Part shown: piece after piece, positions 5,521-53,093 of the stretch
Layout of the letters: the number at the start of each line of letters is the position of its first letter
How positions within the stretch are numbered: position 1 is the stretch's first letter
Assembly: GCA_002269645.1 (NCBI GenBank)
Contig: NIVC01000029.1
Location: 124,001 to 188,000 of the forward strand
Length of the DNA stretch: 64,000 nucleotides
Direction: 5' to 3'
Source of the DNA: Macrostomum lignano
Lineage: Eukaryota
Position numbers and translations under genes: made by a program
Notes under the pieces: generated by a model
Told to the model about the DNA's origin: nothing
Seen by the model: only the letters and a program-made list of their open reading frames with translations
Databases searched by the model: none

Positions 5521-6745
5521 CGCTGGTTGACTGAGAGCTCTCAGATGATTTAAAGTTTGACATTTCTAAATATATAGACATTAAACTCTCAGCAAAGTTA
5601 TGTAATACTCTTAAAATGATTTTTCGTCGCTATTGCTGTTACGCTCGTAAATGAGTGGCCGATTTTCATACACAACGGGAATACCTGCCTTCTGCACCGT
5701 GTAACCTTAAAAGCGATTGCATAATATCATACTGCACTACTCTCGCCGCATATTATGAAGTTTTCTTACTGAACTTGCACCCGTTAACCTACCTACTGTC
5801 ATCTCGTATAACAACTTGCGCAACAGATGAACTATTTTAGATGCATGAATATGAGTATAATAAGATCTTAGAGATTTAGTATATTGTGAATGTTTCCTAC
5901 AGAAGTTTGATTTTATAACTCAAAAGCGTAAAATATTTTTAGAATTATTTTCATGGTGAGTAACGTTCATTAAAAAGCATTTTTACTTTGAAAATTCTCA
6001 GGGCTTTAGTGCGGTCCTCTATATGCATATGGCGCCCTGGTGCTTATACTCGTACGACTACATCTAAAATTAATTTCTTGACACGCACAAAATAATCCAA
6101 AAAACTCCTGACAGTCGCCCAATCGAAAGTAGTATCAGTAACTAAGGGTCTTTTAATCGTATCTGTGGTCCATTTTCTGAAGAGTATTGCAAAACGTTTT
6201 GAAATACATTAAACCCGTTTTTAATAAAGCCATGAATTTTCACTTAATACTAGGCGCGAGTCTGTTATCTTTTTTTCTATTATCAAACGAATGTCTATGT
6301 TGATTCAAACATGTCAGATTATAACATTTACTGTGCTAGCACATCTGACATAGGCGAGTAGGTTAGGTTTATGTGCTTTACGAAGCACGAACATATTGCT
6401 TGCTCTCTTTCTTCTGTCTGTCTGTCTGTATGTACGAGCGTAAATGTACGCGAACAATGTACTCCAATGAAATTTCTTGACTTTCGTCTCCTTGTCTGCT
6501 TTTCTCGATCTGAATATGCATGTAGCTTTATGTGCATATGTACTATTTTTAGTGCTAGTGTACGTACACTATCTAACAGCGGCGACTCCTCTTCCATGGG
6601 GGGTGGTTCTACTGTGTAAAAGGGAACTAAAAGCATACAATTTCCAGGCGATATTGACTAGAAAAGCACAAACTAACACAGCTTTCCGCTTTCAATCTTC
6701 AGAGAAAAAGAACCATAACATATTGAACTCGATATTACATATCCG

Positions 6746-8592
6746 ATGGCGGACAAGAAGAAACGAGAGCTTCATCGAAAGCACTGCGGCATCGATCTAG
6801 ACCAAGTGGTCATTAAAGTAGACATTTACAAGCGACCATTGTATTCTGTGGGCAGCAAGTCTGGTGCCGTTCTCGGCTTTGTTCACGAAGCAGCTGTTGC
6901 TACCACTGAGAACGGTGGACTCTATCTCATTGAGAAGGGTGAGTTTCAGGTATCATAGCTTACGCTCGTAGTTTAGAAACGAGTTCTCAGATATTTTAGT
7001 CGCATCAATAAGATTAGAAACTTTATTTGGTTTAGCTTTGAATAAACCAGTTTGGGCTTATGGTTGTTCAAATGTTTGACCCAACCCAAAAGACCATTAA
7101 TATGATACACTAATATATTAATTTACGTGCATTATGGCCTTTTTGACCCACTACGAGTAAATGTAGCACTGATACAGTACTTGATTTACTTGCTTTAACT
7201 CATTTAAGCAATCAATATGGAGCACTACCTAGCTTAAAATACAAAATGACGAAATGGAGCACAATTAACGTCTTTTGATGAACAGCTTTCAAACGATGTA
7301 TTGTCTGGTTACAAAAAATGATTTCGTCAAATTCAGTCTTCATAATTATATTATAGAATACGAGTGTTACGTCCAGATACCACTGTAGATTCTAGTGCTC
7401 CCTCCTTGCTAAATTTATTGCTGTAACACCTCCGGCTCCAGGTGTCTCGCCCAACGACGACATCAACTTTCCCGCCAGATACAGAGAAGGCGAATGCCGA
7501 ATTGTTGAAATCACTCGAAAAGACATTCGCGATTGGAAACTAATCCGGCCAGTTGGTAAGGTCGATTCCGGCATCACTCTGGAGGACTTGTTCGACTCGT
7601 GCGGCAGCGACTACGGACTGGCTACCGATAACTGCTGGAACGGTACGCATCGGATTCGAGCCAAGTGCAACCCGGATGAGGACGGCATGACCTGGCAGGA
7701 AAAAGGAGCCGTAGGAGTTGGAGTTGGAGTTGGAATTGCCGCAGCCGTAGGGATCTTGGCTTTTGCTCTGTCTGGGAATTCTAAAGAGGTGAGACTTCAC
7801 AGGGGACAGGATGTAGAACCCATTATAGAGCCTTGAGGTCACATGAAATCCCATCATCATTCATTTAATCCCCTGGAAGTTTAATGATTCCAATGATTGG
7901 ATGGGACGCCAACGGTGTTTCTTTCTTTCTTACTTTTAATTCTTCCACCTTTGGCTCGCTTTTGATGTGGGGTCTTTTGATGTTCTTTAGTCGCACCAGA
8001 TGGACATAATCCTGTCCGTTCTTAACGGCCTTGAGAGCCAACCCCCCAAGGCGCAGTGAAGTGTACATGCCTAACGATAAATAAAGTTAGGGCCACTGTA
8101 CACTCCTGTGTGAGTGTGTGCCTGCGTACGTATCCGCGCGCTTGTATGCCTGCTCAGGGGAGTCGGTGGAATGGGCAGTGATGCCTCTCGCCGGTTGTGT
8201 GCCTATGTCGCTTAAAGTGCGCCAGGGTGCGCACAACCCCCCTGCCTCTAATAAAAAAAATAAATCCTGCCCGTTCTCGTCGTGTGCGTCACGAAGGCGG
8301 GCTCTGTCTTCATCAAACACTTGTCCAATCTAAATCATCTCTTTCACCGATTTCTTTTGCATCTCCCCATTATTTAATCGTCGTCCACGGAACTTACTGG
8401 TATTTGTTGTCAGCTTGAGATGGGAGTCTGATGAAGATTGATACAGTACACTAAAAAAGCGTGCAAAATGTTTTGCTGAATTTTTCAGGTTCATGAAGTG
8501 ACACCTGGCATATATTTATTGCTAATAATATATTTCACAAGCTATACGCTCTTACCAATTTGAATTTTCAGAAGGAAAAAGCCAAGCAGTGA
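6746..8592 (+). CDS. LRAT/PLAAT/PPPDE-like permuted papain-fold protein, copy A; exons 6746-6938, 7442-7788, 8572-8592; 186 aa
   Basis: GT-AG phases are consistent (561 nt). Motifs GFVHEAAV (His) and DYGLATDNCWN (Y-x-L-x-x-x-N-C); C-terminal hydrophobic stretch GAVGVGVGVGIAAAVGILAFAL followed by a basic tail. Gene model is well supported; the family call is motif-based. Confidence 0.75.
8021..8262 (+). mobile_element. SINE, 3' part with A-tail, in intron 2 of copy A
   Basis: Reverse complement of part of the 13130-13360 SINE body; ends CCCTGCCTCTAATAAAAAAAA. Confidence 0.85.
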
Positions 8593-9769
8593 TCAGCTTG
8601 CGGTTTAGCAGATCAAATTGCTCGGAGGATCAACACGCTTAGCTGCAAACTTGTGCCAGTTTCGGTCTCTGAAGTGATATCGAGCGACTCCTCTGTCTTA
8701 TATGTATAGTGCATGTGTAATCTAATACTGACATGACTATGCGATGCATATTTCACATTAGTAAATCCTCCGTTCGTTGTGTTTTTTTTGTTTTTTCTCT
8801 ATTATTGATACTAAAAAAGCGCCAACGCACCGCATCTCGTGCTATATTGGTTATTAATCGCTCAAAAATTGCATCCTTACTTATCTGACAAGAAAACCAA
8901 CGATGGACTGCCGTTAACTGCCTTGTTTGCAAAAATGATCTTGTAATATTTTACCTTTCACAATATTTCAATTTTCAAAGATGTCAGCCGATTTTGATTT
9001 TAAATAAACGATTCATTTCAAAAATATTACGCAAAGCAGATATTGGAGAAATGACGCATTGAATATCAAGAATAAAAAACAGAATGCTCTTTAAAAAAGT
9101 TTACCCAGCTCGTACCATTGATTCTCCTGAAAGATCCCATAATAATGAATGGGTAAGCATCGCCAGATTTAATGCGTTTAATCAATATCTGATTAAAATG
9201 CAATCCGTAACATATTGCGATCTTTTCTTTGATACAAAATAGGGAATCCCATTGGTCTAAAATTCTCTAACAGAAGAACTAAAAAATTAAAGAACTACAT
9301 GTACGTATGCAACTTGTTGTTGGAAAGCTTCTCACACAGGATTACAGAATCCAAGTCGAAAGACCTTCAAAGTGAGAGAGAGATATATGAGGGTAATTGT
9401 GTGTATCTCAGTTTCCTTTAAACTCTGAGAAAGCATCCACTCCATGGCTGTTCTGATTGGCGGGAGGTAGGGAGGCATGAAACCTTGGTGAGCAATGGTT
9501 TCCTTAAGATTTTATCCGAGCACAATAAAAATGTACTTGGCACATTACATAGCAGGGGACAATTCAGTCCCGTAATCTGTTTTGTTTTAACCGAGCAAAG
9601 AGCAAGCGGGAGCAAAGTCCTTGGTGTCCACGCGTGACCCTAGTATGAACTCATTGTTGCTGATGGCTGCTTCAAAAGGCGGGGAAGTGATACTCAAAAC
9701 TTTTAGTTCGAAACTTAGCAAAAATATGACTTCGTATGTATTTTATAATTGCGGGAGGGCAAGTGCTTC

Positions 9770-12255
9770 TCTTCTTCTCTCTCCTCTCTGCCACCTCTTT
9801 CCTTCTCTCTCCTTTCCCTGCCGCCTCTCCTTTTTCCTTCTCCCTGCCGCCTCTCCTTTTTCCTTCTCCCTGCCGCCTCTCCTTCTTTTTCCTTCTCCCT
9901 GCCGCCTCTCCTTCTTTTTCCTTCTCCCTGCCGCCTCTCCTTCTTTTTCCTTCTCCCTGCCGCCTCTCCTTCTTTTTTCTTCTCCGTGCCGCCTCTCCTT
10001 CTTTTTCCTTCTCCCTGCCGCCTCTCCTTCTTTTTCCTTCTCCCTGCCGCCTCTCCTTCTTTTTCCTTCTCCCTGCCGCCTCTCCTTCTTTTTCCTTCTC
10101 CCTGCCGCCTCTCTCCTTCTCTCTGCCGCCTCTCTCCTTCTCTCTGCCGCCTCTCTCCTTCTCTCTGCCGCCTCTCTCCTTCTCCCTGCCGCCTCTCTCC
10201 TTCTCTCTGCCGCCTCTCTCCTCCCTGCCGCCTCTCTCCTTCTCTCTGCCGCCTCTCTCCTTCTTTTTCCTTCTCCCTGCCGCCTCTCCTTCTTTTTCCT
10301 TCTCCCTGCCGCCTCTCCTTCTTTTTCCTTCTCCCTGCCGCCTCTCCTTTTTCCTTCTCCCTGCCGCCTCTCCTTCTTTTTCCTTCTCCTTGCCGCCTCT
10401 CTCCTTCTCTCTGCCGCCTCTCTCCTTCTCTCTGCCGCCTCTCTCCTTCTCTCTGCCGCCTCTCTCCTTCTCCCTGCCGCCTCTCTCCTTCTCCCTGCCG
10501 CCTCTCCTTCTTTTTCCTTCTCCGTGCCGCCTCTCCTTCTTTTTCCTTCTCCCTGCCGCCTCTCCTTCTTTTTCCTTCTCCCTGCCGCCTCTCTCCTTCT
10601 CTCTGCCGCCTCTCTCCTTCTCTCTGCCGCCTCTCTCCTTCTCCCTGCCGCCTCTCTCCTTCTCTCTGCCGCCTCTCTCCTTCTTTTTCCTTCTCCCTGC
10701 CGCCTCTCCTTCTTTTTCCTTCTCCCTGCCGCCTCTCCTTCTTTTTCCTTCTCCCTGCCGCCTCTCTCCTTCTCTCTGCCGCCTCTCTCCTTCTCTCTGC
10801 CGCCTCTCTCCTTCTGTCTGCCGCCTCTCTCCTTCTCTCTGCCGCCTCTCTCCTTCTCCCTGCCGCCTCTCTCCTTCTCTCTGCCGCCTCTCTCCTCCCT
10901 GCCGCCTCTCTCCTTCTCTCTGCCGCCTCTCTCCTTCTTTTTCCTTCTCCCTGCCGCCTCTCCTTCTTTTTCCTTCTCCCTGCCGCCTCTCTCCTTCTCT
11001 CTGCCGCCTCTCTCCTTCTCTCTGCCGCCTCTCTCCTTCTCTCTGCCGCCTCTCTCCTTCTTTTTCCTTCTCCCTGCCGCCTCTCCTTTTTCCTTCTCCC
11101 TGCCGCCTCTCCTTCTTTTTCCTTCTCCCTGCCGCCTCTCTCCTTCTCTCTGCCGCCTCTCTCCTTCTCTCTGCCGCCTCTCTCCTTCTCTCTGCCGCCT
11201 CTCTCCTTCTCTCTGCCGCCTCTCTCCTTCTCCCTGCCGCCTCTCTCCTTCTCTCTGCCGCCTCTCTCCTCCCTGCCGCCTCTCTCCTTCTCTCTGCCGC
11301 CTCTCTCCTTCTTTTTCCTTCTCCCTGCCGCCTCTCCTTCTTTTTCCTTCTCCCTGCCGCCTCTCCTTCTTTTTCCTTCTCCCTGCCGCCTCTCCTTTTT
11401 CCTTCTCCCTGCCGCCTCTCCTTCTTTTTCCTTCTCCTTGCCGCCTCTCTCCTTCTCTCTGCCGCCTCTCTCCTTCTCTCTGCCGCCTCTCTCCTTCTCT
11501 CTGCCGCCTCTCTCCTTCTCTCTGCCGCCTCTCCTTCTTTTTCCTTCTCCCTGCCGCCTCTCCTTCTTTTTCCTTCTCCCTGCCGCCTCTCCTTCTTTTT
11601 CCTTCTCCCTGCCGCCTCTCCTTCTTTTTCCTTCTCCCTGCCGCCTCTCCTTCTTTTTCCTTCTCCCTGCCGCCTCTCCTTTTTCCTTCTCCTTGCCGCC
11701 TCTCTCCTTCTCTCTGCCGCCTCTCTCCTTCTCTCTGCCGCCTCTCTCCTTCTCTCTGCCGCCTCTCTCCTTCTCCCTGCCGCCTCTCTCCTTCTCTCTG
11801 CCGCCTCTCTCCTTCTTTTTCCTTCTCCCTGCCGCCTCTCCTTCTTTTTCCTTCTCCCTGCCGCCTCTCCTTCTTTTTCCTTCTCCCTGCCGCCTCTCCT
11901 TCTTTTTCCTTCTCCCTGCCGCCTCTCCTTCTTTTTCCTTCTCCCTGCCGCCTCTCCTTCTTTTTCCTTCTCCCTGCCGCCTCTCCTTTTTCCTTCTCCC
12001 TGCCGCCTCTCCTTCTTTTTCCTTCTCCCTGCCGCCTCTCTCCTTCTCTCTGCCGCCTCTCTCCTTCTCTCTGCCGCCTCTCTCCTTCTCTCTGCCGCCT
12101 CTCTCCTTCTCTCTGCCGCCTCTCTCCTCTCTGCCACCTCTCTCCTTCTCTCTCCTTCTTCCTGCCGCCTCTCCTTTTTTTGCCTTCTCCCTGCCGCCTC
12201 TCTCCTTCTCTCTGCCACCTCTCTCCTTCTCTCTGCCGTCTCTCTCCCCTCTCCT
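9770..12255. repeat. 2.5-kb pyrimidine-rich compound tandem array of ~21-bp and ~29-bp units
   Basis: Units CTCTCTGCCGCCTCTCTCCTT and CTCCCTGCCGCCTCTCCTTCTTTTTCCTT share the TGCCGCCTCTC core. Confidence 0.97.
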
Positions 12256-12779
12256 CTCTACCACCTAAAGACAGCTTTGACTTCAGCAAGACTATGATTT
12301 AAAACCGACGCTGTCAACGTCACAGTTGTTGCAAATATTAAACTCGAAAATGTTTCAGATAAAAATTAAAGATTAGTAGAGACAACCACTCATTCTTAAA
12401 TTCCTAAATTCATTCTTAAATGCATCAAATCAACATTTCTTTGTGGTTAAAATGTACAATGTTAATGTTGGCCAATCGGGGTATAAATATATTTTTTCTG
12501 TTAATTTTAGTCTATGGTCTGAAGCATAAGCTCAGAACTTGCTTCCAGGCCTCGGCGCTAACTTTTATTTTCTTGCTACATGTACTCTGGCTTTCGTGCG
12601 AACTATTTGGACATGGTCATGCGGTTGGGTGAGTGAGACGTAAATAAGCAGCACTCTGTGCCATAGACAGTTTTTTGCCAACAAAATTCGGCAACCGCGC
12701 AAGCTATTCAACAGATCTCGATCTTCAGAGTCAAACAAAACGTAAAATATTAGATTTGATCCTACGAGCGTTCATAAAC

Positions 12780-15457
12780 ATGTCGGAAAAGAAGGAACGA
12801 CAGCGTCGTAGAAAGCACAGCGGCATCGACCTAGACCAAGTGGTCATTAAAGTGGGCATCTACAAGCGACCATTGTATTCTCTGGGCCAGTTCGGGGCCC
12901 TACTCGGCTTAGATCACGAGGCGGCTGTTGCTACCACTGTGAACAGTGGGCTCTATCTGATTGAGAAGGGTGAGTTTCGGGTAGCATATCCGTCGTCTTT
13001 ATTTCCGTCGCATGTATAGGATGGTTGCATGGTTTGATACTTGATTTGATTTAGCTTTTGCTTTGAACTTTTATATTTAGGGCCATGACCAAACTATTTG
13101 CACAGAGTTGCCAAAGCGTATTTTTTTTTTAGAGGCAGGGGGGTTGTGTGCACCCCGGCGCACTTTAAGCGACATAGGCACACAACCGGCGAGAGGCATT
13201 ACTGCCCATTCCGCAGACTCCCCTGAGCAGGCATACAAGCGCGCGGATACGTACGCAGGCACACACTCACACAGGAGTGTACAGCGGCCCTAACTTTATT
13301 TTATCGTTAGGCATGTACACTTCACTGCGCCTTGGGGGGTTGGCTCTCAAGGCCGTTAATTGCACAAGCGAACCAAGCCAAGATTCCAATCCAGCCCCAA
13401 ATTAATGTGGCTGCACTTGGAATCGAGCCTGGGTTGCGGCACACCAGAGCAGCTGCGCTACCGCTGGGCTACGGCCCCCGCTGCCAAAGAGTAGGTAAAA
13501 TTAACTGATAAAAAATAATGGTTCATTTTTTAACTTTGAACTTACTTTGAACTTTAACTTTGGTCATTTTAGACTTTGAATGTTATAATCCTAGGCCTTA
13601 ATTATTAAAGAACCAATATCTTTTTCAACCCAAAACACCGTGCATATAATTCACTTACAACGTCCGTTATACGAGCGTAAAAATTTATTGTGTATTGCAT
13701 TCCAGTGCCACAAGGTGTATCCCTGATACATTATTGATGAGTGTAACTCATTCAACCAATCAATATGGAGCACTACCTAGCTTAAACTTTAGGTTAAAGG
13801 ATAATCAGAAGTTTACTAGATTATCTGGAGGCAAACCAACCCCACGTTCGATGAACAGTAATTTGACAGTTGAATTCTGCATTGGCTTGGTTCAAAAGGG
13901 GCTCTGTAAGTTCATCAACTCAAAATTAAAGAAAAATGCTACTGAACTCTAAAAACGCAAAAATGGAGCACAATTAACGCTCCTTGATGATTCGTTTGTA
14001 AACGATACAGTGCATTGTTGCATTACCATGCATTAACATGCAAAGATGATTGACAGTTTGATATTAAAAAACTGGAATATTCTCATCTCGCAGGATTCGA
14101 CCTTTAAAATTTTTTTATAGAATGAGGGTGTCACGCCATGATACAAGGGAAATTCTAGTCCTCCCTGTTAAATTTATTGCTGTAACACCTCCGGCTCCAG
14201 GTGGCCCGCACGATGACATCAACTTTCCCGCCAGATACCGCGAAGGCGAATGCCGAATCGTTGAAATAACTCCAAAAGACATTCGCGATTGGGAACTAAT
14301 CCGGCCCATTGGTAAGGTCAATCCCGGGGTCACTCTGGAGGACTTGTTCGACTCATGCGGCAGCGAATACGGACTGGCCACTGACAACTGCTGGAACGGC
14401 ACGCATCGGATTCGAGCCACGTGCAACCCGGATGAGGACGGAATGACCTGGCAGGAAAAAGGAGCCCTGCGAGCTGCAGTTGGAGTTGGAATTGCCGTTG
14501 CAGCTGCAGGAATCTTGGCTTTTGCTCTGTCTGGGAATTCTAAAGAAGTGAGGCAACGGATGTAAAACCATTAGTAGTCTTCAGTTCACATTAGTTCATT
14601 TAGTTCATTATTATTCCTTTTATCGCAGGGTGCCCGAAGGATTGCACCTCGGTGGGACACAACAGGTGCTTCCAGTCGAATTGACCTCAAAGTTACTTTT
14701 CAAGATTTATAGAGGCAGGCTGTGTGTGCAGCCTCGCGCACTCTGTCTCATTGTCACACAATCGGCGAGAAGCATTACTGCCCATTCCCCTGAGTAGGCA
14801 CACAAGCGCTTAGATGCGTACATTTATAGTTAGGCATGTAAACTTCACTGTGCCTTGGGGGTTGGCCCTCAAGGGCATTAACTGTGCGAGTAGAGCCAAT
14901 TAGGTGAGATTCCAGTTCAGCCCTAAATTAATGTGTCTTGTATTTGGAATCGAGCCTGGGCCGCTGGCACATCAGAGCGCAGCGCCAGACCACTTGGCTA
15001 CACCTCCACTGTAATTGACTCCTCCCGACCAACTATTTATCGTTTATTCAATCCAGTAGCAAGTTTTGCTTGTTTTGTCATATCAGCAGGAAAATTGGAT
15101 TTTTCGGTTCGATTGACATACATGTATTTTAAGCCTTTTCGAGGTACGAGTATATAGATATATCGAGAGCTTTAGAGGCAGTGCTGACTGGAATTCGCAG
15201 TAGGTCTTCTAGTGCCAAACCTGCTAGTGTAATAGCAGAAGACATTCTACTATTTAGGGGTCCGCAGCTTAAGCCCTTGACCTCCTAGCTTGGCCTCCTG
15301 TGAATCTGTCGGGTTTATAATGCTAAAGACAACAGAACTATGTCTTGATTATTGACACCTCAGCACTCCCGTCGTATGGTTCTTGCTTGTAGTAAACGCG
15401 AAAATATAACCACAAGCCACAAATTTGAATTTTCAGAAGGAAAAGGCAAAGCAGTGA
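12780..15457 (+). CDS. LRAT/PLAAT-like protein, copy B; exons 12780-12969, 14201-14547, 15437-15457; 185 aa
   Basis: Same intron positions and phases as copy A; motifs LDHEAAV and EYGLATDNCWN; ends KEKAKQ*. Confidence 0.75.
13117..13481 (-). mobile_element. Full-length tRNA-derived SINE in intron 1 of copy B
   Basis: Minus-strand head GGGGCCGTAGCCCAGCGG...GGCTCGATTCC with poly-A tail. Apparent target-site duplication (TSD) TGCCAAAG at 13109-13116 and 13482-13489. Absent at the homologous site of copy C (~20390). Confidence 0.9.
14711..15008 (-). mobile_element. Degenerate copy of the same SINE (intron 2 of copy B)
   Basis: Colinear similarity to the 13.1 kb copy with small internal deletions. 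Confidence 0.8.
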
Positions 15458-17072
15458 TCAACAAATAAGGTTTAACAAATCAAAATACTCGGAGGATCAA
15501 CACGCTTAGCTGCAAACTTGTGTCTAGTAGAGCGACTTTACTCTCTCTTAAATGTATGCATGTGTAATCTATGTGGTTCTAATAGAGACATGACTATACA
15601 TTAATGATTTATCGATGGTACTTCAGACCTTCAAATTATTGTGTCCTCTGTTCGCAGTGCTTTAATTTTTTTTATTGATGTCAAATAACTGACACGACTG
15701 ACATAAACCAACATTTTGCATTTTAAATAAAAAGCAACTATCGACTGACTATCGATACCTCATTTTTACCTTTCATAGGGTTACAAAGAGATCAAAGTTG
15801 TTTCAGATTTAAAATAATAAATTCCTTTCAAACTTGTTACCCAAAGTAAATAATTTAGGAATGACGCATTGAAATTTGAGAAAAATGCTCTAAAAAATTA
15901 ACCTAGCTCGTAGATTGATTCTCCTGAAAGATTTCATCGTAACGGTGTAGGCCATTGGCAGATTGAATGAGTTTATTTAATATATTTTAAAATTCAATCT
16001 GAAATATTGCTTCTTGTAGCTTCTTTTCGTTGCCAATACTGTACGAAAGTACGCACTCGACATACACACTCACACAGGTGTACAGCGTTCCTTATAATTG
16101 TACTTTTCGTTCCTTACGTTAAACCCTGAAAATATCGACAGAGCTTTTAAACTTTAAAAGCAAGATGTACAGCATAGATTCGACCATAGACAATTTATTG
16201 GGCAGAAGTGGAGCTGCCTGTAGCATAGTCTTACTAAAGATGCACAGCTTCTCGTGTGAGACTTTTTCAGCAGCCATAGACTATACGATCCCCTCTATAG
16301 TAGGTAGTAGGATTATATACGCTTTCTATACATAAATATACATATACATGAATCATATAATGCGCTATGCTCGTTCAACCGCTAGTTTCACTTCTCGTTG
16401 AATAAGCTGGAGAAAGCCATATGTTCCGCCGCCGCTGCCGCTGCCCAGGATTCTGGGACTACTGCCGCCGCTGCGACCGGATTAAGTCGCTTCTGCTGTT
16501 GCGCCCAGCAGCAGCCACAGTCACCAACAGTTTCGCCAAGTAGGCTCAGCAGCAAAAGCACTGTTCTTTTGCCACAGCCAGGTAAGAGTATTTTTGTTTT
16601 TATTGGTGCTGCTTTCGATGACGAAAATATTTTGTCCGAAAATATTCTGGTGCATTCATGCCCCAAATCAAATTGCATCCGTCGCTCCCTCTGTTCACGT
16701 CGTTGACAGGCGGCTGTTCAAGAAGGCGCTGCGGCCGCTTCCTATAGGACGGCCCAGAATACTACTGCCATTCCGACGATGCAACGGATGCCTCCATTGG
16801 TGAAAAGCCAGACAATCGTCGCGCATGCCGTGGAATGTCTGTGCTGCAACTGGCATGCGTCGTATTTGAAGCAGCCCGGAGCGCTGAAAATGATGCTCGT
16901 GTCTGCCTGAAGCTGTCGAATTGAGCGACTCAATCGGCGATCAGTGAGTGGGGTTAGGACCTGTCCCCCTGTCCCCATCGCAATCTATGCAAGTTTGTAT
17001 ACTTCTCCCTCAAAAAATAAAAAAATCATTGCCTATTTTCTTCAATCAGAATCACAATAAAGACACCAATAC

Positions 17073-17096
17073 CAACAACAACAACAACAACAACAA
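17073..17096. repeat. (CAA)n microsatellite
   Basis: Direct reading. Confidence 0.9.
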
Positions 17097-17554
17097 GAGT
17101 AACAACTAAAACAACTAAAAAACGGCATACTACGATTCAATACAACACAAAAATAGGCGCCAGTAATAACGAGTTTCCCGCTATCCAGAACCCACATTAT
17201 GGAGCCGTGCACTGAGTACACTCTTCTGACTAGCGACAACAATATCAGTCAGAAGACATCCAGCTTTCATGCATTTATTAGCATCGCAGTACTCCATAAC
17301 TGTTGCGATTTGATTGGAAGGTTGCGGGACATGTTCAAAAAATCCGGTCGCAACGCTGACGTCTTTGCCATGCGCAACTGGACCCAAATTGAAATTAAGA
17401 GTGTCCCCAGCGCGGCGATCTGTATGGCGTGTGCGAGCGCCAACCAGCCACCCTCTTCCACAGCAACAACGCCACCCTCTTCCACAGCAACAACACCACC
17501 ACACCGCTAAAGAATGGCTGTAGTAACAGCAGCAGCAACAGCAACCACAGCAGC

Positions 17555-17865
17555 CTGAATGTATGGTGTGCCAGCTTCGCGCAGGCATGACGATGCTCTG
17601 CGCCGAGACCCAGCACCGATTCGGTATGATCGATAATCCGCAGTGCCCGGACTGCGGAGAACTCGACGACAGCGCCCATGCGCTACTTCACTGCCACCGG
17701 GGAGACGCTCGACGGATGGCCCTGGTCGGGAACGATCACGAGGAGCTCCTCCGGAACCCGGGAAAATGTCTCTCGCTCCTTCGGAGCATGGGGCGATGGC
17801 CCCCGCAAATCTCGGCGCCGCCGCGCCGGTAAAGCGAGCGCTGAAGACGAAGAAGAAGAAGAAGC
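17555..17865 (+). mobile_element. 3' end remnant of a non-LTR retrotransposon
   Basis: QLRAG...CPDCGELDDSAHALLHC is the C-terminal CCHC-type motif found after LINE reverse transcriptase (RT); the stop is followed by a (GAA)n tail at ~17843-17865. Confidence 0.7.
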
Positions 17866-20032
17866 CTGAATGTACAGCTCTCAGGCTTTATGACGACATT
17901 ATGTACATGGGTACGAGTGTGTGCACCTTCCAGGCAGAAGGAAATCTGAGGTTTATCTGTAGAGAAGGCCCACCGCCGACCATTTCTCTTTGGGGCCTTC
18001 TGGCGTTGAAAAAACAGCTAATATGGTGTACCGTTGTAGCTACGATCGGACTACGATCTGCTCTAACGTCTATGGCTCAATTTGTTACAGTTGGGGCTGC
18101 ATCTCGTTTGGGCTTCATATGTTACACTGGCGTACCTGACCAGAGCTACTGCTTTATTTATGAAAAGTGAGTTTTAGAAAGGAAGAAAGGAAGGGGCAAA
18201 CTATGTAGACTTTTTGAACGAGCAGTTTTTTGTTTAACCGACCAAACGACCACCGCAGTGGAGGTTCGAGCTACCAGCAACAGTTCCAGCACAGTCAGCA
18301 ACAGGGCGCAAGCACAAATGAAATGCATTCAGTGCATGCTAGCCTATGTTAAACACAACCCGCATGTATCTGAAATCGCCGGTGGAGTGCATGCAGCTAC
18401 CCGCGGCGGTATAGGTAGGCCAAAAAATGAAGTCTGTCAGGTGTATAGCGTTTTAACTTTGCTGACCTTATTCAGTGAGCCGCTGCTGACCTGGCAAAAC
18501 GGTAACAATGACCTACTTCGTCAGTGTCGCCAACTCACAGTTTGTGTTGTGCACCAGCGAAGGTGAACTGATGTCAGTGGTGTCAACGTTCAGCTGTTTA
18601 ACACGCCAAATCGATTCTCGGTTGTTCCAGCGTCAGCAGACCAAACATATTTTTCAGCTCCAAACAGGACAGTGTGGATATCGGGCGGCCAGAGTTGGTT
18701 GACAATCGAACGGTCGTGCAAGCCACTGTCGATCAGATGGAATTTAGCGAGCCTCCGCCACCGCTAAATCTGCTGCCGTCGTCACCGCCGCAGCCGCCGA
18801 GTCCGAAAGCGACGACGTAGTTACACCGTCATAGAATGTCGCATCCGCTCCGGCGACCGCTGAAGCAAGCACATACGCTGGTGATAGATAAGGAATCGCC
18901 AGGGACTATTTCAGAGCAGCAGAAACAGCCCCCCCGCGCAGAGTTAGCGCCCTGACTGCATGGTGCTAGACACCCGGTCCTATTAGCTACGTCTAGCTAC
19001 AATGTCCGTGACCCGAAGAAGAATAAGAAAAAGGTAACATTGGCCGTGTTCTTTCGCAACCAGTTACCCAAATGGAACGTTAGCCACATCAGTCTAAACG
19101 TAAACGCAGTGCGGCTGCGGCAATTACGTCTGGCACAGATTTCCAGGCAACAGTGGTGAGAGACCCGCTCAGACTCGGTTGTTTAAGCAGCGCAATACCA
19201 AAATTATGACCAGCACAGTTCCCTTAAAAATAAACATATTTTTCCATTGCCATTTTAGAGTTGTGACAGTCTGATCGCAACTAAGAAACATTAACATCTC
19301 GCTCATGTAAATATGCCTCTAAAGCCAATCAATATTTTTCAACGGATGTGTGCTCGGCATAAGCTCGTAATATTGTGGTACCGCATGCACTCACCCAAGT
19401 GAAAACGATGTACGTATTGAAAGCTGCCTACAGCTATTTCTATTTGTGATTTTCATTGAAATTTTTTATCTGCATCATCTACATTAGCAGTGTAAAATTT
19501 TGTAACTATGCTAATTGTTGCTTAAATTCTGTAGTTTAAAAAAATACAAATTCACAGTTTCTACATTATCTACCGTCTTTTTATTTCCATATTTTTTCGA
19601 ATAAGTATAGATTGTCTACTTGTTAGTATTAGTAGCTCACTAGCTTAGCATTGTGATGGCCCAGTTTCTTTGCTTTGTTAGTTTGATTTAACTGCTAGAT
19701 GCATACATAGCTGTATTGATGTTAAGAAACAGTTTGAGTTGTATACCTACCGCTATAGCTACCGCCGCTTTAACAAAGTCAGCAACTTTTTACTGCCGCT
19801 TTGCCACAATGCTTAAACTTTTAATACCGCTTTACTATTGTCCGTTAAAGAAGCCAACTAGAGAATTAATAGGAAATTTGTAAAGCGCCCCATGAAAACA
19901 AGTCACCAGTTCTATGCCAATTTCCAAACGATATTAACTACAGGAAAGCATGGACTAACATATCAAGCTCTCCGACCTCAATCTTCAGAGACAAAGAAAA
20001 CCATAAAATATTAATTTGATCTTGCATAGACG

Positions 20033-22978
20033 ATGGCGGACAAGAGGAAACGACAGCTTCGTAGAAAGCACTGCGGCATCGACCTAGACCAAGTGGTCAT
20101 TAAAGTCGGCATCTACAAGCGACCATTTTATTCTGCGGGCAACAAGTTCGGTGCCCTTCACGGCTTTGTTCACGAGGCGGCTGTTGTTACTACTAAGAAC
20201 GGTGGGCTCTATCTGATTGAGAAGGGTGAGTTTCGGGTAGCATATCCGTCGTTATTTCCGTCGCATTTATAGGATGGTGGCACGGTTTGATACTTGATTT
20301 GATTTGGATTTTGCTATGGCCTTATGCGTGTTTAAACTTTTATTCTTTGAACTTTATTTAGAGCCATGACCAATTCTAATTGCACAGAGTTGCCAAAAAG
20401 CAGGTAAAATCAACTAATAAAAAATAATGGTTCATACTGTAACAGTCCTTTTAGACTTTGAATGTTATAATCCTAGGTCTTGATCCTTAACATCTACGGT
20501 ACGGGTGGATTTTGCGACCCAAAACACCTAGCATATAATGAACTTGTATATTAATTTTTATGTATATGGTGTTTCCGTCTCACAAAATGTAGCCCTGATA
20601 CATCGATGAGAGTGTAACTCATTTAACTAATCAATATGGAGCACTACCTAGATCAAACTTTGGGTTAAAAGATAATCAGAAGTTTAATATGGATTATCTG
20701 GTGGTAAACCCCACGTTCGACGAACAGTAATTTGACAGCCGAATTCTGCATTTGCTTGGTTCAAAGGGGCTCTGTAAGTTCATCAACTCAAATGGAGGAA
20801 ACTGTTACTGTAGTATGAAAAAAACGCAACAAATGGAGAACCATTAACGCTCTTTGATGATTAGTTTTTAAGCGATGCAGTGCATTGTTGCAAAAATGCA
20901 TTTAGAGAGCACACTGAACTTTCGCCTTTCCTACTTCCAGAGGTTTAAAAAATGAACTCAACAAGCATATAGAAGCATGTAGATGTATAACTGAAGCCTT
21001 GACAATCAGATATTGACAGTTTGGTATTAAAAATTGTAATGTCATCTCGTAGGGATTCGACCTTCAAAAAAACTGCATAGAACACTGGTAATACGAGTGA
21101 GGCACTTACCAGGGCAAATTCTAGGTGCTCATTGTTACAATTTATTGCTGTAACACCTCCGGCTCCAGGTGGTCCGAACGACGACATCAGCTATCGGGCC
21201 AGATACCGCGAAGGCGAATGCCGAATCGTTAAAATCATTCGACGAGACATTCGCGATTGGGAACTGATCCGGCAGGTTGGCAAGGTCGATCCCGGCGTCA
21301 CTCTGAAGGACCTGTTCGACTCGTGCGGCAGCGACTATGGACTGTTCACTGACAACTGCTGGAACGGCACGCATCGGATTCGAGCCAAGGCCAGCCCGGA
21401 TGAGGACGGAATGACCTGGCAGGAAAAAGGAGCCCTGGGAGCTGCAGTTGGAGTTGGAATTGCCACTGCAGCCGCAGGGATCTTGGCTATCGCTCTGTCT
21501 GGGAATTCTAAAGAGGTAAGAGGTTATATTGTTAGTGAAAGAGATGTAAAAACCAAGTCTAAGAAATTTGCTAGCAGGAAATCTGCTAGTCGAAGTTTGC
21601 TAGCGAGAAATTTGCTTGCCGAAATCTGCTAGCCGAAATCTGCTAGCCGAAACCTGCTAGCCGAAGTTTGCCAGCCGAAGCTTGCTAGCAGGAATTTTGC
21701 TAGCGAGGATTTTGCTAGCCGAGATTTGCTAGCGAGAATCCAACCAAAACCGGCAAGCAGCAATTGGGCTAGCCGAACTCAGGAAGTTGTAATTAGCTAG
21801 AGACAATTTGCTTGTCCAGTTTCGCAAGAATTTCACTAAATCCTCTATAGCGTCGCTCCACTTTTACCAATCCTCTTCAACTTGGACACAATGAATTTTC
21901 AACTATTTGGACACAATCCTGTAAAGTTTCGAGTCTCGAAGTAAATTCTGAACGGCACTGTGTACTTTTAAAGTTAGTCTGCCTTTCGTCAGCGAGACAG
22001 CCACCCCAACCTCCGCCTCTCTCTCCTTCCTGGCCACTGGACAGATGTGTGAAAGGGGTTTAAAATTAACTAACTTTCAGCTGCCATAAGCTTGCTCCAC
22101 GTACGGCGATTGACTTCAAACTTGATACAATTCTTCATTGAGTCATTCTTTGTCTAAATAAAGTCTCAACTTTGTACCTCAATCAGGACAGAAACTGTAG
22201 GCAAGTGAAGTTTGTCTGCTTTTTCCGTTGTGCCGCTCATCGGACTCATCCAACTCATTCCCCTCCCCCAGACCAAGGATCAGGTGATAGGGCTCAATGT
22301 ACATAGCAAATTTACAGTGTTTTGGAATAACTTTTTATAGCCTTCTCTGCTAACGTTTAGCCATGACAGTTTAGTAAGCAATTCAACTACCGTCCTACTA
22401 CGAGCTATCTGATTGCAACTTGAGAGTATTCTGTTCCCCACAATGACAAACTGACTTTCCAAGCACTTGAAATGATGCTGATGCTTTAAGTTATAAAATA
22501 TTTGGGATTTTTTACCCACTTCTCTGGATTTTTTACCCAAAACCGCGCATTACTATTGCCAGAAAACAAGCAATCTTTTGACACCGGTTGCAAGAAGTTC
22601 GGTCAGCAAATTCCCGCTAGCAGATTTCGGCTAGCTATATCCTCGCTAGCAAAATTCCTGCTAGCAAGCTTCAGGATACGTACGCAGTCATACGGACAGG
22701 CACACACACAGGAGTGTACAGCGGCCCTAACTTTATTTATCGTTAAGGCATGTACACTTCACTGTGCCTTGGGGGTGTGCCCTCAAAGACGTTAGTCTCA
22801 CGAGTAGAGCCAAGCCGAGATTCCAATTTAGCCTCGAATTAATGTGACTGCATTTGGAATCGAGCCTGGGCCGCTGGCACATCATAGCGACATCAACAGA
22901 ATCTCTTGCTTATAGTAACGCAAAAATCAATCACAAGTTGTTTATTTGAATTTTCAGAAAGAAAAAGCCAAGCAGTGA
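20033..22978 (+). CDS. LRAT/PLAAT-like protein, copy C; exons 20033-20225, 21169-21515, 22958-22978; 186 aa
   Basis: Same exon structure as A and B; motifs GFVHEAAV and DYGLFTDNCWN; ends KEKAKQ*. Confidence 0.75.
21560..22672. mobile_element. Foldback/MITE-like element with repeat-rich inverted ends, in intron 2 of copy C
   Basis: GCTAGC-cored ~14-15-bp repeats at 21560-21735. 22600-22672 is the reverse complement of ~21677-21735 (GAAGCTTGCTAGCAGGAATTTTGCTAGCGAGGAT). Confidence 0.6.
22673..22885 (-). mobile_element. Partial SINE copy abutting the truncated right arm of the foldback element
   Basis: Matches the middle part of the SINE; the 3' part is missing and the head is truncated. Confidence 0.75.
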
Positions 22979-24342
22979 TCCACCTGCGATTTAACAGATC
23001 AAATTTCGGAGGATCAACACGCTTAGCTGTCAACTTGTGCCAGAATCGAGCGACTCGACTCTCTTAAATGTATGCATATCTAATGTATGTGGATGATAAA
23101 TAATCACATGACTATGCAGTAAATATTTCTCGAAGGTGCGTCAAAATTTATTTTGAATTTTGCTTTTAGTATTGATACTTAATAGCGCGAACGCACCGCA
23201 TCTCGATCTGCTCCTTAATTGTTTAAATATCACATATCCGACCCTAACTGACGTGAAAAACCAATTATTGACTATATCGATAACTCCTGTGTTTGCAAAT
23301 ACGTTAATTCATACTATTTCTACCTTTCGTTGGGTTTCAAAGAAGTCAAAACCGATTTGGGGATGTTAAATAAAAATTATTTTATAGCTGTTACTTAAAG
23401 TAGATATTTTAAGAATGGTGCATTAAAATTCAAAAATAAAAATCGAAAGCTCTTTGAAACATTAACCCAGCTCGTAACATTGCTTCTCCTGAAAGGTCTC
23501 ATCATAACGGTAGGACATCGGCAGATTAAATTGGTTTATTTATTATCTGATTCAAAATGCAATCTGAAAGAAAAGAAGAAATATATCTGAAATATTGCTA
23601 CTATGTTTCTTTTCTTCATTTTTTATTGAAGACTGTTAAGAGTGTCATAGCACTACTCGTTTTAATGAGGTCAACCTAGATAAACAGCGCGCACGGAATC
23701 AAACTAGGGGGTCGTGGCGCGAGATTCAGACTCGTTTACCGATGACTGCTTTGCCCCCTAATGATAAGGAAGGTCACTAACATTTTAAAGATATTGCCAT
23801 TTTGAATTGATTTTTCAGACTGATTACTGATTACTGCTTGCATCGCTATCTTCATCACTCGTCGAGCAATGTGCCATATCGGTAGAAGCTCGAAGTTCTA
23901 ATTGCTCGTAATAGGGAAGGAATTTCAGCTATTTGCAAGCAAAAACTTTCTGATTCAAAGGAAATATCTTTGACCTGACGATATAATTACCACGAGAGAA
24001 AATTTCTGTTTTCTGATCCAGCCTCGACAATGAACAAGCCCTAACTGATGGACATCCTCGACTAGTAGTCTCTCGAGCATTAATTCGTCATCCTGATGAC
24101 ATATACGCCCTTTTAACAGGTAGCGAAATTGTTGAAACCTTGACGGCGATTTTCTTTGTGTCTGCTTGTGTTTAAGAATTTTGTTTCCACCCAAAAACAT
24201 ATTGTCTGTGGGAATCGACCCTTTACAGTAAATCTGCCCTTTCGTAAAAAACACAGACGGAAAAATAACTTGATATTGTTATGCCGTGGCTTTCGCCCGA
24301 GATAGAACAAGGATTTCCCTGGGTGGTCGGGTAGGTCTTGAT

Positions 24343-32947: not shown

Positions 32948-33044
32948 ACTGTGAAACTGAAGTATGGGATCTACGAGAATTCTCCTCTCTCACTTTCTTT
33001 GAGACTTTTCCTCACTGATGATTTGCAAGATGGGACGGGCGACA

Positions 33045-33378
33045 GCTACAGAGGGGTCATCAGCTTAGCTACAGAGGGGGCATCAGCTTAGCTACAGAGG
33101 GGGCATCAGCTTAGCTACAGAGGGGTCATCAGCTTAGCTACAGAGGGGGCATCAGCTTAGCTACAGAGGGGTCATCAGCTTAGCTACAGAGGGGCATCAG
33201 CTTAGCTACAGAGGTGCATCAGCTTAGCTACAGAGGGGCATCAGCTTAGCTACAGAGGGGTCATCAGCTTAGCTACAGAGGGGGCATCAGCTTAGCTACA
33301 GAGGTGCATCAGCTTAGCTACAGAGGGGTCATCAGCTTAGCTACAGAGGGGGCATCAGCTTAGCTACAGAGGGCATCA
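33045..33378. repeat. ~23-bp minisatellite, ~14 copies
   Basis: Unit CATCAGCTTAGCTACAGAGGGG(G/T). Confidence 0.95.

Positions 33379-35384: not shown

Positions 35385-35810
<426 letters not shown>

Positions 35811-45350: not shown

Positions 45351-53093
<7,743 letters not shown>

What the first reader, a model, noticed from the sequence alone, without database searches (positions are those of the whole stretch)
6746..22978. Tandem array of an unnamed tail-anchored LRAT/PLAAT-like enzyme family
Seen: three intact ~186-aa paralogues in segmental duplications (starts at 6746, 12780, 20033) with identical exon structure. All keep His (HEAAV) and NC (Y.L.TDNCW), ~85 aa apart, plus a Gly/Ala/Val-rich hydrophobic C-terminal segment and a basic tail. 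Known: LRAT/PLAAT and PPPDE proteins are permuted NlpC/P60 papain-fold enzymes with His before Cys, and PLAATs have a C-terminal membrane anchor. Inference: a lineage-expanded phospholipase/acyltransferase or isopeptidase family acting on organelle or pathogen membranes. The ORF track splits it into unrecognisable pieces.
Basis: partly seen in the sequence, partly recalled or inferred. Interest (0 to 1): 0.7.

Follow-up and report, generated by a model that had tools for sequence, protein, structure and literature searches.

The report
Flatworm tail-anchored LRAT-like enzyme gene array
Three neighbouring, intact genes of the flatworm Macrostomum lignano (plus one dead copy) encode small membrane-anchored proteins that most likely are distant, so far unnamed relatives of the PLAAT/LRAT lipid-modifying thiol enzymes; the resemblance is consistent but statistically modest, and no function has been tested.

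Summary
The window is Macrostomum lignano DNA. It carries three intact 3-exon genes on the + strand, starting at 6746, 12780 and 20033 and ending at 22978. They encode proteins of 185-186 aa that are 81-83% identical, with dN/dS of 0.29-0.55. GenBank lists them as hypothetical proteins. A fourth, inverted copy at 5520-4680 is a pseudogene.

His47 and Asn128-Cys129 are invariant across an 18-sequence family: more distant M. lignano paralogues and unnamed eukaryotic metagenome sequences. Position 63 is always polar (Glu, His, Asp or Gln).

An AlphaFold model (core pLDDT 85-95) puts His47 at the start of a strand, residue 63 on the next strand and Cys129 at a helix N-terminus. A C-terminal transmembrane segment follows, as in PLAAT3.

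Profile-profile comparison with PLAAT3 aligns all three catalytic positions in register (P 4e-4 to 6e-3, above all column shuffles).

Against this, Pfam LRAT and PPPDE models do not match. Foldseek finds no significant PDB hit. Its significant hits are two unannotated giant-virus proteins and a picornavirus polyprotein.

Verdict: a new family-level branch of the permuted NlpC/P60 (LRAT-like) clan, probably a tail-anchored Cys-His-Glu acyl hydrolase/transferase. The substrate is unknown. Interest is moderate.

The parts
6746..6938 (+). Copy c1, exon 1 (residues 1-64 plus 1 nt). It holds the basic N-terminus, strand 1 and the His motif; the His47 codon is at 6884-6886.
   Evidence: The donor is AAGG|gtgagt. 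The spliced product is identical to PAA93337.1 / P0002.
7442..7788 (+). Copy c1, exon 2 (residues 65-180). It holds Glu-Cys82, Trp96, the Y122..N128-C129 motif (Cys codon 7633-7635) and the hydrophobic anchor (about 7708-7773).
   Evidence: The acceptor is ctccag|GT and the donor AAAGAG|gtgaga.
8572..8592 (+). Copy c1, exon 3: KEKAKQ plus the stop.
   Evidence: The pattern search gave 3 hits against 0 expected. The acceptor is ttttcag|.
12780..12969 (+). Copy c2, exon 1.
   Evidence: The spliced product is identical to PAA93338.1 / P0004.
14201..14547 (+). Copy c2, exon 2.
15437..15457 (+). Copy c2, exon 3 (KEKAKQ plus the stop).
20033..20225 (+). Copy c3, exon 1.
   Evidence: The spliced product is identical to PAA93339.1 / P0140 and 98% identical to P0001.
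21169..21515 (+). Copy c3, exon 2.
22958..22978 (+). Copy c3, exon 3 (KEKAKQ plus the stop).
4680..5520 (-). Fourth copy, head-to-head with c1: a pseudogene. Exon 1 (5520-5368) is interrupted after FVHEAA by a SINE-like insert (5367-5221), and in-frame stops follow. The exon-2 remnant (5102-4823) has a 2-nt frameshift deletion and about 70 nt of deletions that remove the post-Cys helix and most of the anchor. The DNCW motif is still recognisable (4925-4908).
   Evidence: tblastn pieces fall in three different frames at 47-68% identity. Sequence and ORFs are; the DNA alignment to c1 exon 2 is.
6638..9218 (+). Duplicated unit 1: about 110 bp upstream of the ATG to about 630 bp past the stop.
   Evidence: Self-blastn blocks.
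12714..16010 (+). Duplicated unit 2.
   Evidence: Self-blastn blocks.
19918..23569 (+). Duplicated unit 3. It shares intron-1 homology with unit 2.
   Evidence: Self-blastn blocks.

Best explanation
The three genes encode tail-anchored thiol enzymes. They belong to a previously unnamed family within the circularly permuted NlpC/P60 (papain-like) clan, and the LRAT/PLAAT family is their nearest known relative.

Inferred mechanism:
- The C-terminal Gly/Ala/Val-rich helix (residues about 154-175) with its short basic tail inserts post-translationally into a membrane. This leaves the roughly 150-residue N-terminal domain on the cytosolic face.
- Cys129, at the N-terminus of a helix, is the nucleophile.
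- His47, at the start of a beta-strand, is the general base.
- Glu63 on the neighbouring strand orients the His. This position is His in most distant relatives, and Asp or Gln in two others.
- By analogy with PLAAT enzymes, the Cys would attack an acyl ester of a membrane phospholipid and form a thioester. The acyl group would then pass to water (phospholipase A1/2) or to an amine or hydroxyl acceptor (acyltransferase).

Shown here: gene structure, intactness, purifying selection, conservation pattern, predicted topology, the hydrophobic tail, and a weak but register-correct profile similarity to PLAAT3.

Inferred, not shown: catalysis, lipid substrate, membrane identity, biological role.

The array arose by tandem duplication before the genome duplications of M. 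lignano, because the same three-gene array sits on three contigs.
For: Genes and selection:
- The GenBank annotation derives from RNA-seq-guided transcript assembly (PMC5730564). The 21-nt terminal exon therefore implies transcript support.
- dN/dS is 0.29-0.55.

Family and conservation:
- Exhaustive HMMER over 1.84 billion representatives finds only 9 proteins with E<1e-3. They are M. lignano paralogues P0005-P0007 and unnamed eukaryotic sequences.
- 11 more metagenome loci were found.
- Invariant residues across 18 sequences are H47, L61, K64, Y122, N128 and C129. Position 63 is E, H, D or Q.

Structure:
- AlphaFold2 with the 13-sequence alignment gives mean pLDDT 72 and a core of 85-95.
- Strands are 21-30, 47-54, 59-64, 78-88 and 97-104. 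Helices are 111-118, 129-140 and 149-161.
- This order matches the PLAAT description: a 5-6-stranded antiparallel sheet and 3-4 helices, with H23 in B2 and C113 in helix A3 (PMC8154263).

Profile comparison with a PLAAT3 profile (hhalign):
- P=0.0024, 4.3e-4 and 0.0059.
- Every run aligns H47~H23, E63~H35 and C129~C113.
- 0 of 200 and 0 of 120 column shuffles reach the observed score.
- As a yardstick, LRAT versus PPPDE gives P=7e-5 on the same footing.

Other support:
- The tail anchor has KD 2.2-2.4 and lies 12-14 residues from the C-terminus. PLAAT3 has 2.08 and 11 residues. hhalign also aligns the NC helix plus anchor to PLAAT3 residues 105-160.
- Foldseek against BFVD hits a picornavirus polyprotein at E=4.8e-3, kobuvirus polyproteins at 0.3, and a Pithovirus protein named LRAT at 0.48.
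- Sub-threshold Pfam hits over the Cys motif are Peptidase_C97 (P0005, 0.08) and Calici_PP_N (L010, 0.078).
- UniProt names paralogue P0007 'LRAT domain-containing protein'.
Against: - No Pfam family matches the three proteins, LRAT PF04970 and PPPDE PF05903 included, even at E<=10.
- phmmer and hmmsearch against PDB sequences find nothing relevant.
- Foldseek against the PDB has no hit below E=0.15, and PLAAT2/3/4 structures are not among the top 50.
- hhalign probabilities are low (6-34%), and P varies tenfold with alignment settings.
- The PLAAT signature NCEHFV is reduced to N-C.
- The third triad residue lies 16 residues after the His, not 12, and is Glu in the array.
- The alignment behind the model has only 13 sequences.
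- The His-Cys distance could not be measured.
- Some distant relatives carry signal peptides and lack the anchor, so a lipid substrate at the cytosolic membrane face is not a family-wide property.
- No expression or functional data were found.
Confidence: 0.55

Rival explanations
1. The proteins are membrane-anchored PPPDE/DeSI-like isopeptidases or amidases. A Cys-His enzyme would remove ubiquitin, SUMO, or an acyl or peptide group from proteins at a membrane, rather than acting on lipids.
For: - The His-before-Cys order and the 'Y.L...NC' motif are shared by PPPDE and LRAT families.
- Paralogue P0005 gives a sub-threshold Peptidase_C97 hit over the Cys motif (E=0.08).
- hhalign against a small PPPDE profile gives P=0.015-0.033 at the Cys motif.
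- The best, non-significant PDB Foldseek hits are papain-fold deubiquitinase-like 'clippases'.
- Distant relatives are secreted or soluble, which fits a non-lipid substrate.
Against: - The PPPDE alignment covers only 23-26 columns. The PLAAT alignment covers 85-93 columns and includes all three catalytic positions.
- Per PMC10318531, C97 has no third catalytic residue. This family keeps a conserved polar residue at position 63.
- The solved DeSI-1 chains matched here (2WP7, 3EBQ) align only over a soluble domain, and neither molecule name mentions a membrane anchor.
- The PPPDE profile used had only 3 sequences, so the comparison is not even-handed.
Confidence: 0.15
2. The His/Cys conservation is real but the fold is not NlpC/P60-like. 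The family would then be a structurally new small membrane protein whose resemblance to LRAT motifs is convergent or due to chance.
For: - There is no significant PDB Foldseek hit.
- No Pfam hit was found.
- hhalign probability is at most 34%.
- The two best BFVD hits are unannotated giant-virus proteins (E=5e-5 and 8e-5), and their fold class is unknown to me.
Against: - Three independent catalytic positions align in register with PLAAT3 in every hhalign run, and the score exceeds all shuffles.
- Having the Cys at a helix N-terminus and the His at a strand start is the papain-like arrangement.
- Viral H/NC-type proteins recur among the Foldseek hits.
- Both sub-threshold Pfam hits at the Cys motif belong to the same clan.
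Confidence: 0.15
3. The proteins are catalytically inert tail-anchored proteins, for example adaptors or regulators, like the LRATD/FAM84 branch of the LRAT family. The motifs would be retained for structural reasons.
For: No activity data exist. The canonical NCEHFV signature is degenerate, and the third residue is Glu rather than His.
Against: - His47, Asn128 and Cys129 are invariant across about 25% identity. They are retained in all nine annotated copies of the array on three contigs.
- Only six positions are invariant in total, and three of them are the predicted active-site residues.
- Purifying selection acts on the copies.
Confidence: 0.1

Closest known systems
PLAAT1-4 / HRASLS phospholipase A and acyltransferases and LRAT (Pfam PF04970, permuted NlpC/P60)
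   Same: - The proteins are small, 160-190 aa.
- The His lies N-terminal to the Cys.
- An Asn-Cys dipeptide sits at a helix N-terminus and is preceded by 'G..Y.L.T/S'.
- A polar third residue lies on the strand after the His strand.
- The beta-sheet comes first and the helices follow.
- A single C-terminal Gly/Ala-rich transmembrane anchor is followed by a short basic tail (SGNSKEKEKAKQ here, SRNKRQKQ in PLAAT3).
- The hhalign alignment is register-correct for the triad (PMC8154263).
   Different: - The Pfam model does not match.
- NCEHFV is replaced by DNC[WIMH][NH][GA].
- The third residue is Glu (His, Asp or Gln in relatives) and lies 16 rather than 12 residues after the His.
- A loop of about 15 residues is inserted between strand 1 and the His strand.
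- The disordered L1 loop is replaced by a shorter structured segment.
- Identity in the aligned region is about 15%.
- PDB Foldseek does not retrieve PLAAT structures.
Viral H-box/NC proteins (kobuvirus and parechovirus 2A; calicivirus NS1-2, Pfam Calici_PP_N)
   Same: - They are permuted NlpC/P60, LRAT-like domains with a His box and an NC motif.
- They recur among the Foldseek hits. Aichivirus 2A appears with TM 0.35-0.40 normalised by target length.
- Picornavirus and kobuvirus polyproteins also appear.
- L010 gives a sub-threshold Calici_PP_N hit.
   Different: These are parts of viral polyproteins. The structural scores are weak (E 5e-3 to 2), and no sequence-level relatives were found in viral contigs.
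PPPDE / DeSI-1, DeSI-2 (Peptidase_C97, PF05903)
   Same: This is a permuted papain fold with the His before the Cys and a 'Y.L...NC' motif. Weak matches occur at the Cys motif.
   Different: C97 has a Cys-His dyad with no third residue (PMC10318531). The solved DeSI-1 chains matched here align only over a soluble domain. The similarity is limited to about 25 columns.
Two uncharacterised giant-virus proteins (Tupanvirus A0A6N1NL70; Moumouvirus A0A2P1EKP2)
   Same: These are the only statistically significant structural matches: Foldseek E=5e-5 and 8e-5, probability 1.00, TM 0.44-0.47 normalised by query length, and 136-176 aligned columns.
   Different: They are much larger proteins (535 and 366 aa) with no informative annotation. 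Their sequences could not be retrieved here, so whether they carry the His/Cys residues is unknown.

Membership tests
LRAT/PLAAT family (Pfam PF04970) | A match to the curated family model at or above the gathering score. | tested here: not met
   hmmscan against Pfam-A at E<=10 gives no LRAT hit for the three array proteins or for 16 relatives.
LRAT/PLAAT family (Pfam PF04970) | Permuted order: the catalytic His (H-box) lies N-terminal to the catalytic Cys, and both are conserved. | tested here: met
   H47 and C129 are invariant in 18 sequences at about 25% mean identity.
LRAT/PLAAT family (Pfam PF04970) | The NCEHFV signature around the nucleophile (PMC8154263). | tested here: not met
   Only Asn128-Cys129 is kept. 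The following residues are W/I/M/H/Q, N/H/D, G/A.
LRAT/PLAAT family (Pfam PF04970) | A third triad residue (His, or Asn in PLAAT1) on the strand following the His strand. | tested here: inconclusive
   Position 63 is Glu in the array and His, Asp or Gln in relatives. It lies on strand 59-64 and aligns with PLAAT3 H35. The chemistry is plausible, but the residue and spacing differ.
LRAT/PLAAT family (Pfam PF04970) | A segregated alpha+beta papain-like fold, with the Cys at a helix N-terminus packed against the His-bearing sheet. | tested here: inconclusive
   The predicted secondary-structure order fits.
LRAT/PLAAT family (Pfam PF04970) | Statistically supported profile-profile homology. | tested here: inconclusive
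   hhalign gives P of 4.3e-4 to 5.9e-3 and probability of 6-34%. The score is above all 320 column shuffles, and the triad is in register.
LRAT/PLAAT family (Pfam PF04970) | A C-terminal transmembrane anchor (PLAAT1-4). | tested here: met
   The 19-residue window has mean KD 2.2-2.4 and lies 12-14 residues from the C-terminus, with no other hydrophobic segment. PLAAT3 has 2.08 and 11 residues.
LRAT/PLAAT family (Pfam PF04970) | Thioester-mediated phospholipase A1/2 or acyltransferase activity. | not testable with these tools
   This needs biochemistry.
PPPDE / DeSI (Pfam PF05903, Peptidase_C97) | A match to the curated family model. | tested here: not met
   There is no hit for the array proteins. 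Only P0005 hits, at E=0.08 (13.2 bits against a cut-off of 29.2), over the Cys motif.
PPPDE / DeSI (Pfam PF05903, Peptidase_C97) | Profile-profile similarity across both the His and the Cys motifs. | tested here: not met
   hhalign aligns only 23-26 columns around the Cys, with P=0.015-0.033. The PPPDE profile had just 3 sequences.
Tail-anchored membrane proteins | A single hydrophobic segment within about 30 residues of the C-terminus, and no N-terminal signal peptide. | tested here: met
   Hydropathy scan. The N-terminus is basic and polar (MADKKKRELHRKH).

The most novel reading that the evidence does not exclude
This is a family-level branch of the permuted papain-like (NlpC/P60) clan that no domain database recognises. 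So far it is seen only in Macrostomum and a handful of unidentified eukaryotes. It has secreted, soluble and tail-anchored forms, and its only significant structural relatives are uncharacterised Mimiviridae proteins. In M. lignano the tail-anchored, tandemly amplified and homogenised copies could be PLAAT-like effectors that rupture or remodel organelle or pathogen-containing membranes. That would be an independent invertebrate counterpart of vertebrate PLAAT biology.
Probability: 0.3. Interest if true: 0.55.

Novelty: new variant of a known kind. Interest (0 to 1): 0.4.

Why it matters
PLAAT enzymes are studied for organelle degradation in the lens, for picornavirus entry, and as tools to ablate organelles (PMC10760033, PMC9338259). 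Their relatives outside vertebrates are poorly mapped.

If the assignment holds, it adds a divergent Cys-His-Glu, tail-anchored branch in a genetically tractable flatworm where transgenesis and RNAi are available. It would also give a name and a testable hypothesis to at least nine 'hypothetical protein' entries and several more distant paralogues. The structural link to giant-virus proteins, if confirmed, would raise the question of virus-host exchange of these domains.

The finding is otherwise modest. It is a small lineage-restricted gene family with a remote, not yet conclusive, homology assignment and no functional data.

Tried and rejected
- **Pfam on the three proteins and 16 relatives:** no family-level hit.
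- **PDB sequence searches** with a single sequence and three profiles: only chance-level hits, namely ISWI, TM1112 and L23a.
- **First AlphaFold run** with the 4-sequence alignment: unusable, pLDDT 37. It was replaced by the 13-sequence run.
- **Word-index protein search** with the family profile: no new members.
- **Viral contig scans** with two profiles: no sequence relatives.
It succeeded with the distant subgroup.
- **A shared ancient intron after 'L[IV][EH]K':** rejected as evidence. The intron is phase 1 in M. lignano and phase 0 in L016. It lies 8 codons downstream in L018 and is absent in L008 and L009.
- **Zinc-binding or disulfide role for His/Cys:** rejected. No other Cys or His is conserved across the family.
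- **TE-derived ORFs or annotation artefacts:** rejected. Splice sites are conserved, dN/dS is below 1, and the annotation is transcript-based.
- **Source names** 'DNA-binding protein', 'Protein kinase domain-containing', 'PHD-type' and 'HTH_48' for cluster members: the last three are attached to much longer sequences (1901 and 2752 aa) or their UniRef clusters, which I take to be fused gene models; none has Pfam support here.
- **Expression data:** gene identifiers were not found in main texts or in the held supplements of three papers. One look-up timed out.
- **SINE-like repeat:** ARAGORN and Rfam found nothing.

Full report
**1. What is in the sequence**

The window is eukaryotic DNA of about 40-45% G+C with many tandem repeats. 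A protein search identifies it as Macrostomum lignano, a free-living flatworm.

In the flagged interval there are three genes on the + strand, each with three exons:
- c1: 6746-6938 / 7442-7788 / 8572-8592.
- c2: 12780-12969 / 14201-14547 / 15437-15457.
- c3: 20033-20225 / 21169-21515 / 22958-22978.

All have the donor AAGG|gtgagt after exon 1 (phase 1), the acceptor ctccag|GT, a second donor AAAGAR|gtrag (phase 0), and a 21-nt terminal exon preceded by ttttcag that encodes KEKAKQ-stop. The terminal-exon pattern occurs three times against zero expected.

The spliced products (186, 185 and 186 aa) are identical to GenBank PAA93337.1, PAA93338.1 and PAA93339.1. These are consecutive 'hypothetical proteins' on a 1.39-Mb contig. 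That annotation derives from an RNA-seq-guided transcript assembly (PMC5730564). The genes are therefore transcribed, although I found no expression pattern for them.

The duplicated units span 6638-9218, 12714-16010 and 19918-23569. Exons are 84-87% identical and introns and flanks 70-80%. The same three-gene array is present on two further contigs of the redundant assembly. The tandem triplication is therefore older than the duplication that produced those contigs. One copy there (P0003) is a mosaic of c1-like and c2-like tracts, which suggests gene conversion.

**2. Additions to the observation**

A fourth copy lies head-to-head with c1 on the - strand (about 5520-4680) and is a pseudogene:
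- Exon 1 is cut after FVHEAA by a SINE-like insert (5367-5221) and continues with in-frame stops.
- The exon-2 remnant has a 2-nt frameshift.
- It has also lost about 70 nt, including most of the hydrophobic tail.

The three intact copies evolve under purifying selection. dN/dS is 0.29, 0.36 and 0.55, with dS of 0.19-0.29.

**3. The family**

No Pfam family matches the three proteins, even at E<=10. No PDB sequence matches either.

An exhaustive HMMER search of 1.84 billion representative proteins returned only nine proteins with E<1e-3:
- the array itself;
- three more distant M. lignano paralogues (P0005, P0006, P0007);
- five unnamed proteins from ENA/Logan assemblies.

UniProt calls P0007 'LRAT domain-containing protein' and calls a 167-aa member of P0006's cluster (P0016) 'Membrane spanning protein'.

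A metagenome scan added 11 loci. Some have introns, so they are eukaryotic. Some have N-terminal signal peptides and no C-terminal anchor.

Across the 18 sequences, mean identity is about 26%. The invariant positions are H47, L61, K64, Y122, N128 and C129. W96 is nearly invariant. Position 63 is Glu in the array, His in most distant members, and Asp or Gln in two.

No other Cys or His is conserved, which argues against a metal site or a disulfide role.

**4. Structure**

With four near-identical sequences AlphaFold failed (pLDDT 37). With the 13-sequence alignment it gave mean pLDDT 72 and pTM 0.66, with 85-95 over residues 20-150.

The element order in the model is:
- strand 21-30;
- a low-confidence loop;
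- strand 47-54, starting with His47;
- strand 59-64, carrying Glu63 and Lys64;
- a short helix;
- strands 78-88 and 97-104;
- helix 111-118;
- a loop with Tyr122;
- helix 129-140, starting with Cys129;
- helix 149-161, running into the hydrophobic tail.

This is the arrangement described for PLAAT2-4: a five- or six-stranded antiparallel sheet and three or four helices. In PLAAT, H23 lies in B2, H35 is the second triad histidine, and C113 is part of helix A3 (PMC8154263).

Coordinates are not exposed by the tools.

**5. Structural searches**

Foldseek against the PDB gave no significant hit. The best was E=0.15, to a papain-fold 'clippase'. The LRAT-like Aichivirus 2A appears at E of 1-2 with TM 0.35-0.40 by target length. 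PLAAT structures are absent from the top 50.

Foldseek against predicted viral structures gave:
- two significant hits to unannotated giant-virus proteins (Tupanvirus 5e-5, Moumouvirus 8e-5);
- one hit to a fish picornavirus polyprotein fragment (4.8e-3);
- sub-threshold hits to kobuvirus polyproteins (0.3) and to a Pithovirus protein named lecithin retinol acyltransferase (0.48).

The recurrence of H-box/NC-type viral proteins is suggestive but not proof.

**6. Profile-profile test**

I verified a recalled human PLAAT3 sequence against PDB 4FA0/4DOT. It is 100% identical over residues 1-134. I then built a 15-sequence PLAAT3-type profile.

hhalign of the flatworm family against it gave three results:
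- P=0.0024 with 13 sequences;
- P=4.3e-4 with 18 sequences, L-INS-i alignment and -M first;
- P=0.0059 with the tool's own 18-sequence alignment.

Probabilities were 6-34%. In every run the alignment is in register for all three catalytic positions: H47 with H23, E63 with H35, and C129 with C113.

None of 200 and none of 120 column-shuffled PLAAT profiles reached the observed score. The maxima were 18.9 against 26.3, and 23.9 against 30.7.

As a yardstick, PLAAT against a small PPPDE profile scores P=7e-5. These two families are accepted members of one clan (PMC10318531). The flatworm family against PPPDE scores P=0.015-0.03, over the Cys motif only.

Two sub-threshold Pfam hits in relatives fall on the Cys motif, and both belong to the same permuted clan. 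They are Peptidase_C97 (P0005, 0.08) and Calici_PP_N (L010, 0.078).

**7. The tail**

The only strongly hydrophobic segment is C-terminal:
- Mean Kyte-Doolittle is 2.2-2.4 over 19 residues.
- It lies 12-14 residues from the end.
- It is followed by SGNSKEKEKAKQ.

PLAAT3 has 2.08, 11 residues, and SRNKRQKQ. hhalign aligns the NC helix plus anchor of the two proteins. Paralogues P0006 and P0007 have the same tail.

There is no signal peptide, so this is tail-anchored topology with the catalytic domain in the cytosol.

**8. Interpretation**

The most likely reading (confidence about 0.55) is a tail-anchored Cys129-His47-Glu63 thiol enzyme of a new family in the permuted NlpC/P60 clan, closest to LRAT/PLAAT. 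By analogy it would be an acyl hydrolase or transferase acting on membrane lipids through a thioester intermediate.

The clan-level assignment is better supported than the substrate. I would put the clan at about 0.7. The substrate rests only on the anchor and the nearest-family analogy.

Membership of the Pfam LRAT family itself fails two tested criteria, the model match and the NCEHFV signature. I therefore do not file these proteins as PLAATs. They look like something that works like one.

The rivals are:
- a PPPDE-like isopeptidase or amidase (0.15);
- an unrelated fold with convergent motifs (0.15);
- a catalytically inert anchored protein (0.1).

**9. Novelty and interest**

The genes are already in GenBank as hypothetical proteins, and one remote paralogue carries an automatic LRAT label. 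The family as such is unnamed and absent from Pfam. It is restricted to M. lignano and a few unidentified eukaryotes in the databases searched.

I rate it a new variant of a known kind. Interest is moderate (0.4): a specialist in papain-like enzymes would find it a plausible new branch rather than a surprise.

The most novel reading still open is a structural relationship to giant-virus proteins combined with PLAAT-like membrane-disrupting biology. I put this at about 0.3.

Noticed in passing
window 9621-12302 (and 46445-47594): A CT-rich minisatellite of about 2.6 kb, with 21-, 29- and 42-bp periods and open in all six frames, sits between c1 and c2. A block about 70% similar lies in inverse orientation at 46.5-47.5 kb.
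   Followed up: no
window 8022-8262, 13119-13477, 22674-22888, 63199-63559, 5221-5367: There are five copies of a SINE-like interspersed repeat at 82-97% identity. Three sit in introns or flanks of the array genes, and one disrupts exon 1 of the pseudogene. ARAGORN and Rfam do not recognise it.
   Followed up: partly
window 6700-6702, 12726-12728, 19986-19988: A conserved 'atcttcag|ag' acceptor-like motif lies 43-51 nt upstream of each start codon, inside the duplicated block. It may be a spliced-leader trans-splice site or a 5'-UTR exon boundary.
   Followed up: no
L007 (contig NIVC01001413.1): The same three-gene array is present on two other contigs (293 kb and 114 kb). The middle gene on the 293-kb contig (P0003) is a mosaic of c1-specific and c2-specific residues, which suggests gene conversion between paralogues.
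   Followed up: partly
window 29609-30211 and 31259-31864 (+): Two ORF pieces match the rhodopsin-family 7TM receptor model (E=7e-13 and 2e-9). They are probably two exons of one GPCR gene.
   Followed up: no
window 41157-44070 (-) and 61543-62052 (+); 17563-18170 (+): These are retrotransposon remnants. RT-RNase H and gag-aspartyl-protease fragments lie in a G+C-rich block at 41-44 kb, and an RVT_1 fragment at 61.5 kb. An ORF between c2 and c3 with a CPDCG...H..LL.C motif, typical of non-LTR elements, has no Pfam hit.
   Followed up: no
window 3151-3627 (+) and 59315-60262 (-): A CCCH zinc-finger ORF lies just beyond the pseudogene. An ornithine/arginine-decarboxylase-like PLP-binding fragment sits near the far end of the window.
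   Followed up: no
window 21560-21750: A short tandem 'gctagc(c/g)aaa...' repeat begins immediately after the exon-2 donor of c3. If that intron were retained, it would add a 38-residue Ser/Arg/Leu-rich tail. Read-through tails of c1 and c2 are unrelated.
   Followed up: no
L008, L009 (metagenome contigs) and P0012: Distant family members carry N-terminal signal-peptide-like segments and end right after the Cys helix. The family therefore includes probably secreted forms in unidentified eukaryotes.
   Followed up: partly
window 33044-33379, 35386-35810, 48016-48286, 50282-51211, 51781-52655, 53370-55154, 56382-57091, 58401-59248: The second half of the window has an unusually dense series of micro- and minisatellite arrays, for example 23 bp x 73 at 53479-55154 and (TAGA)n at 35386-35810.
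   Followed up: no
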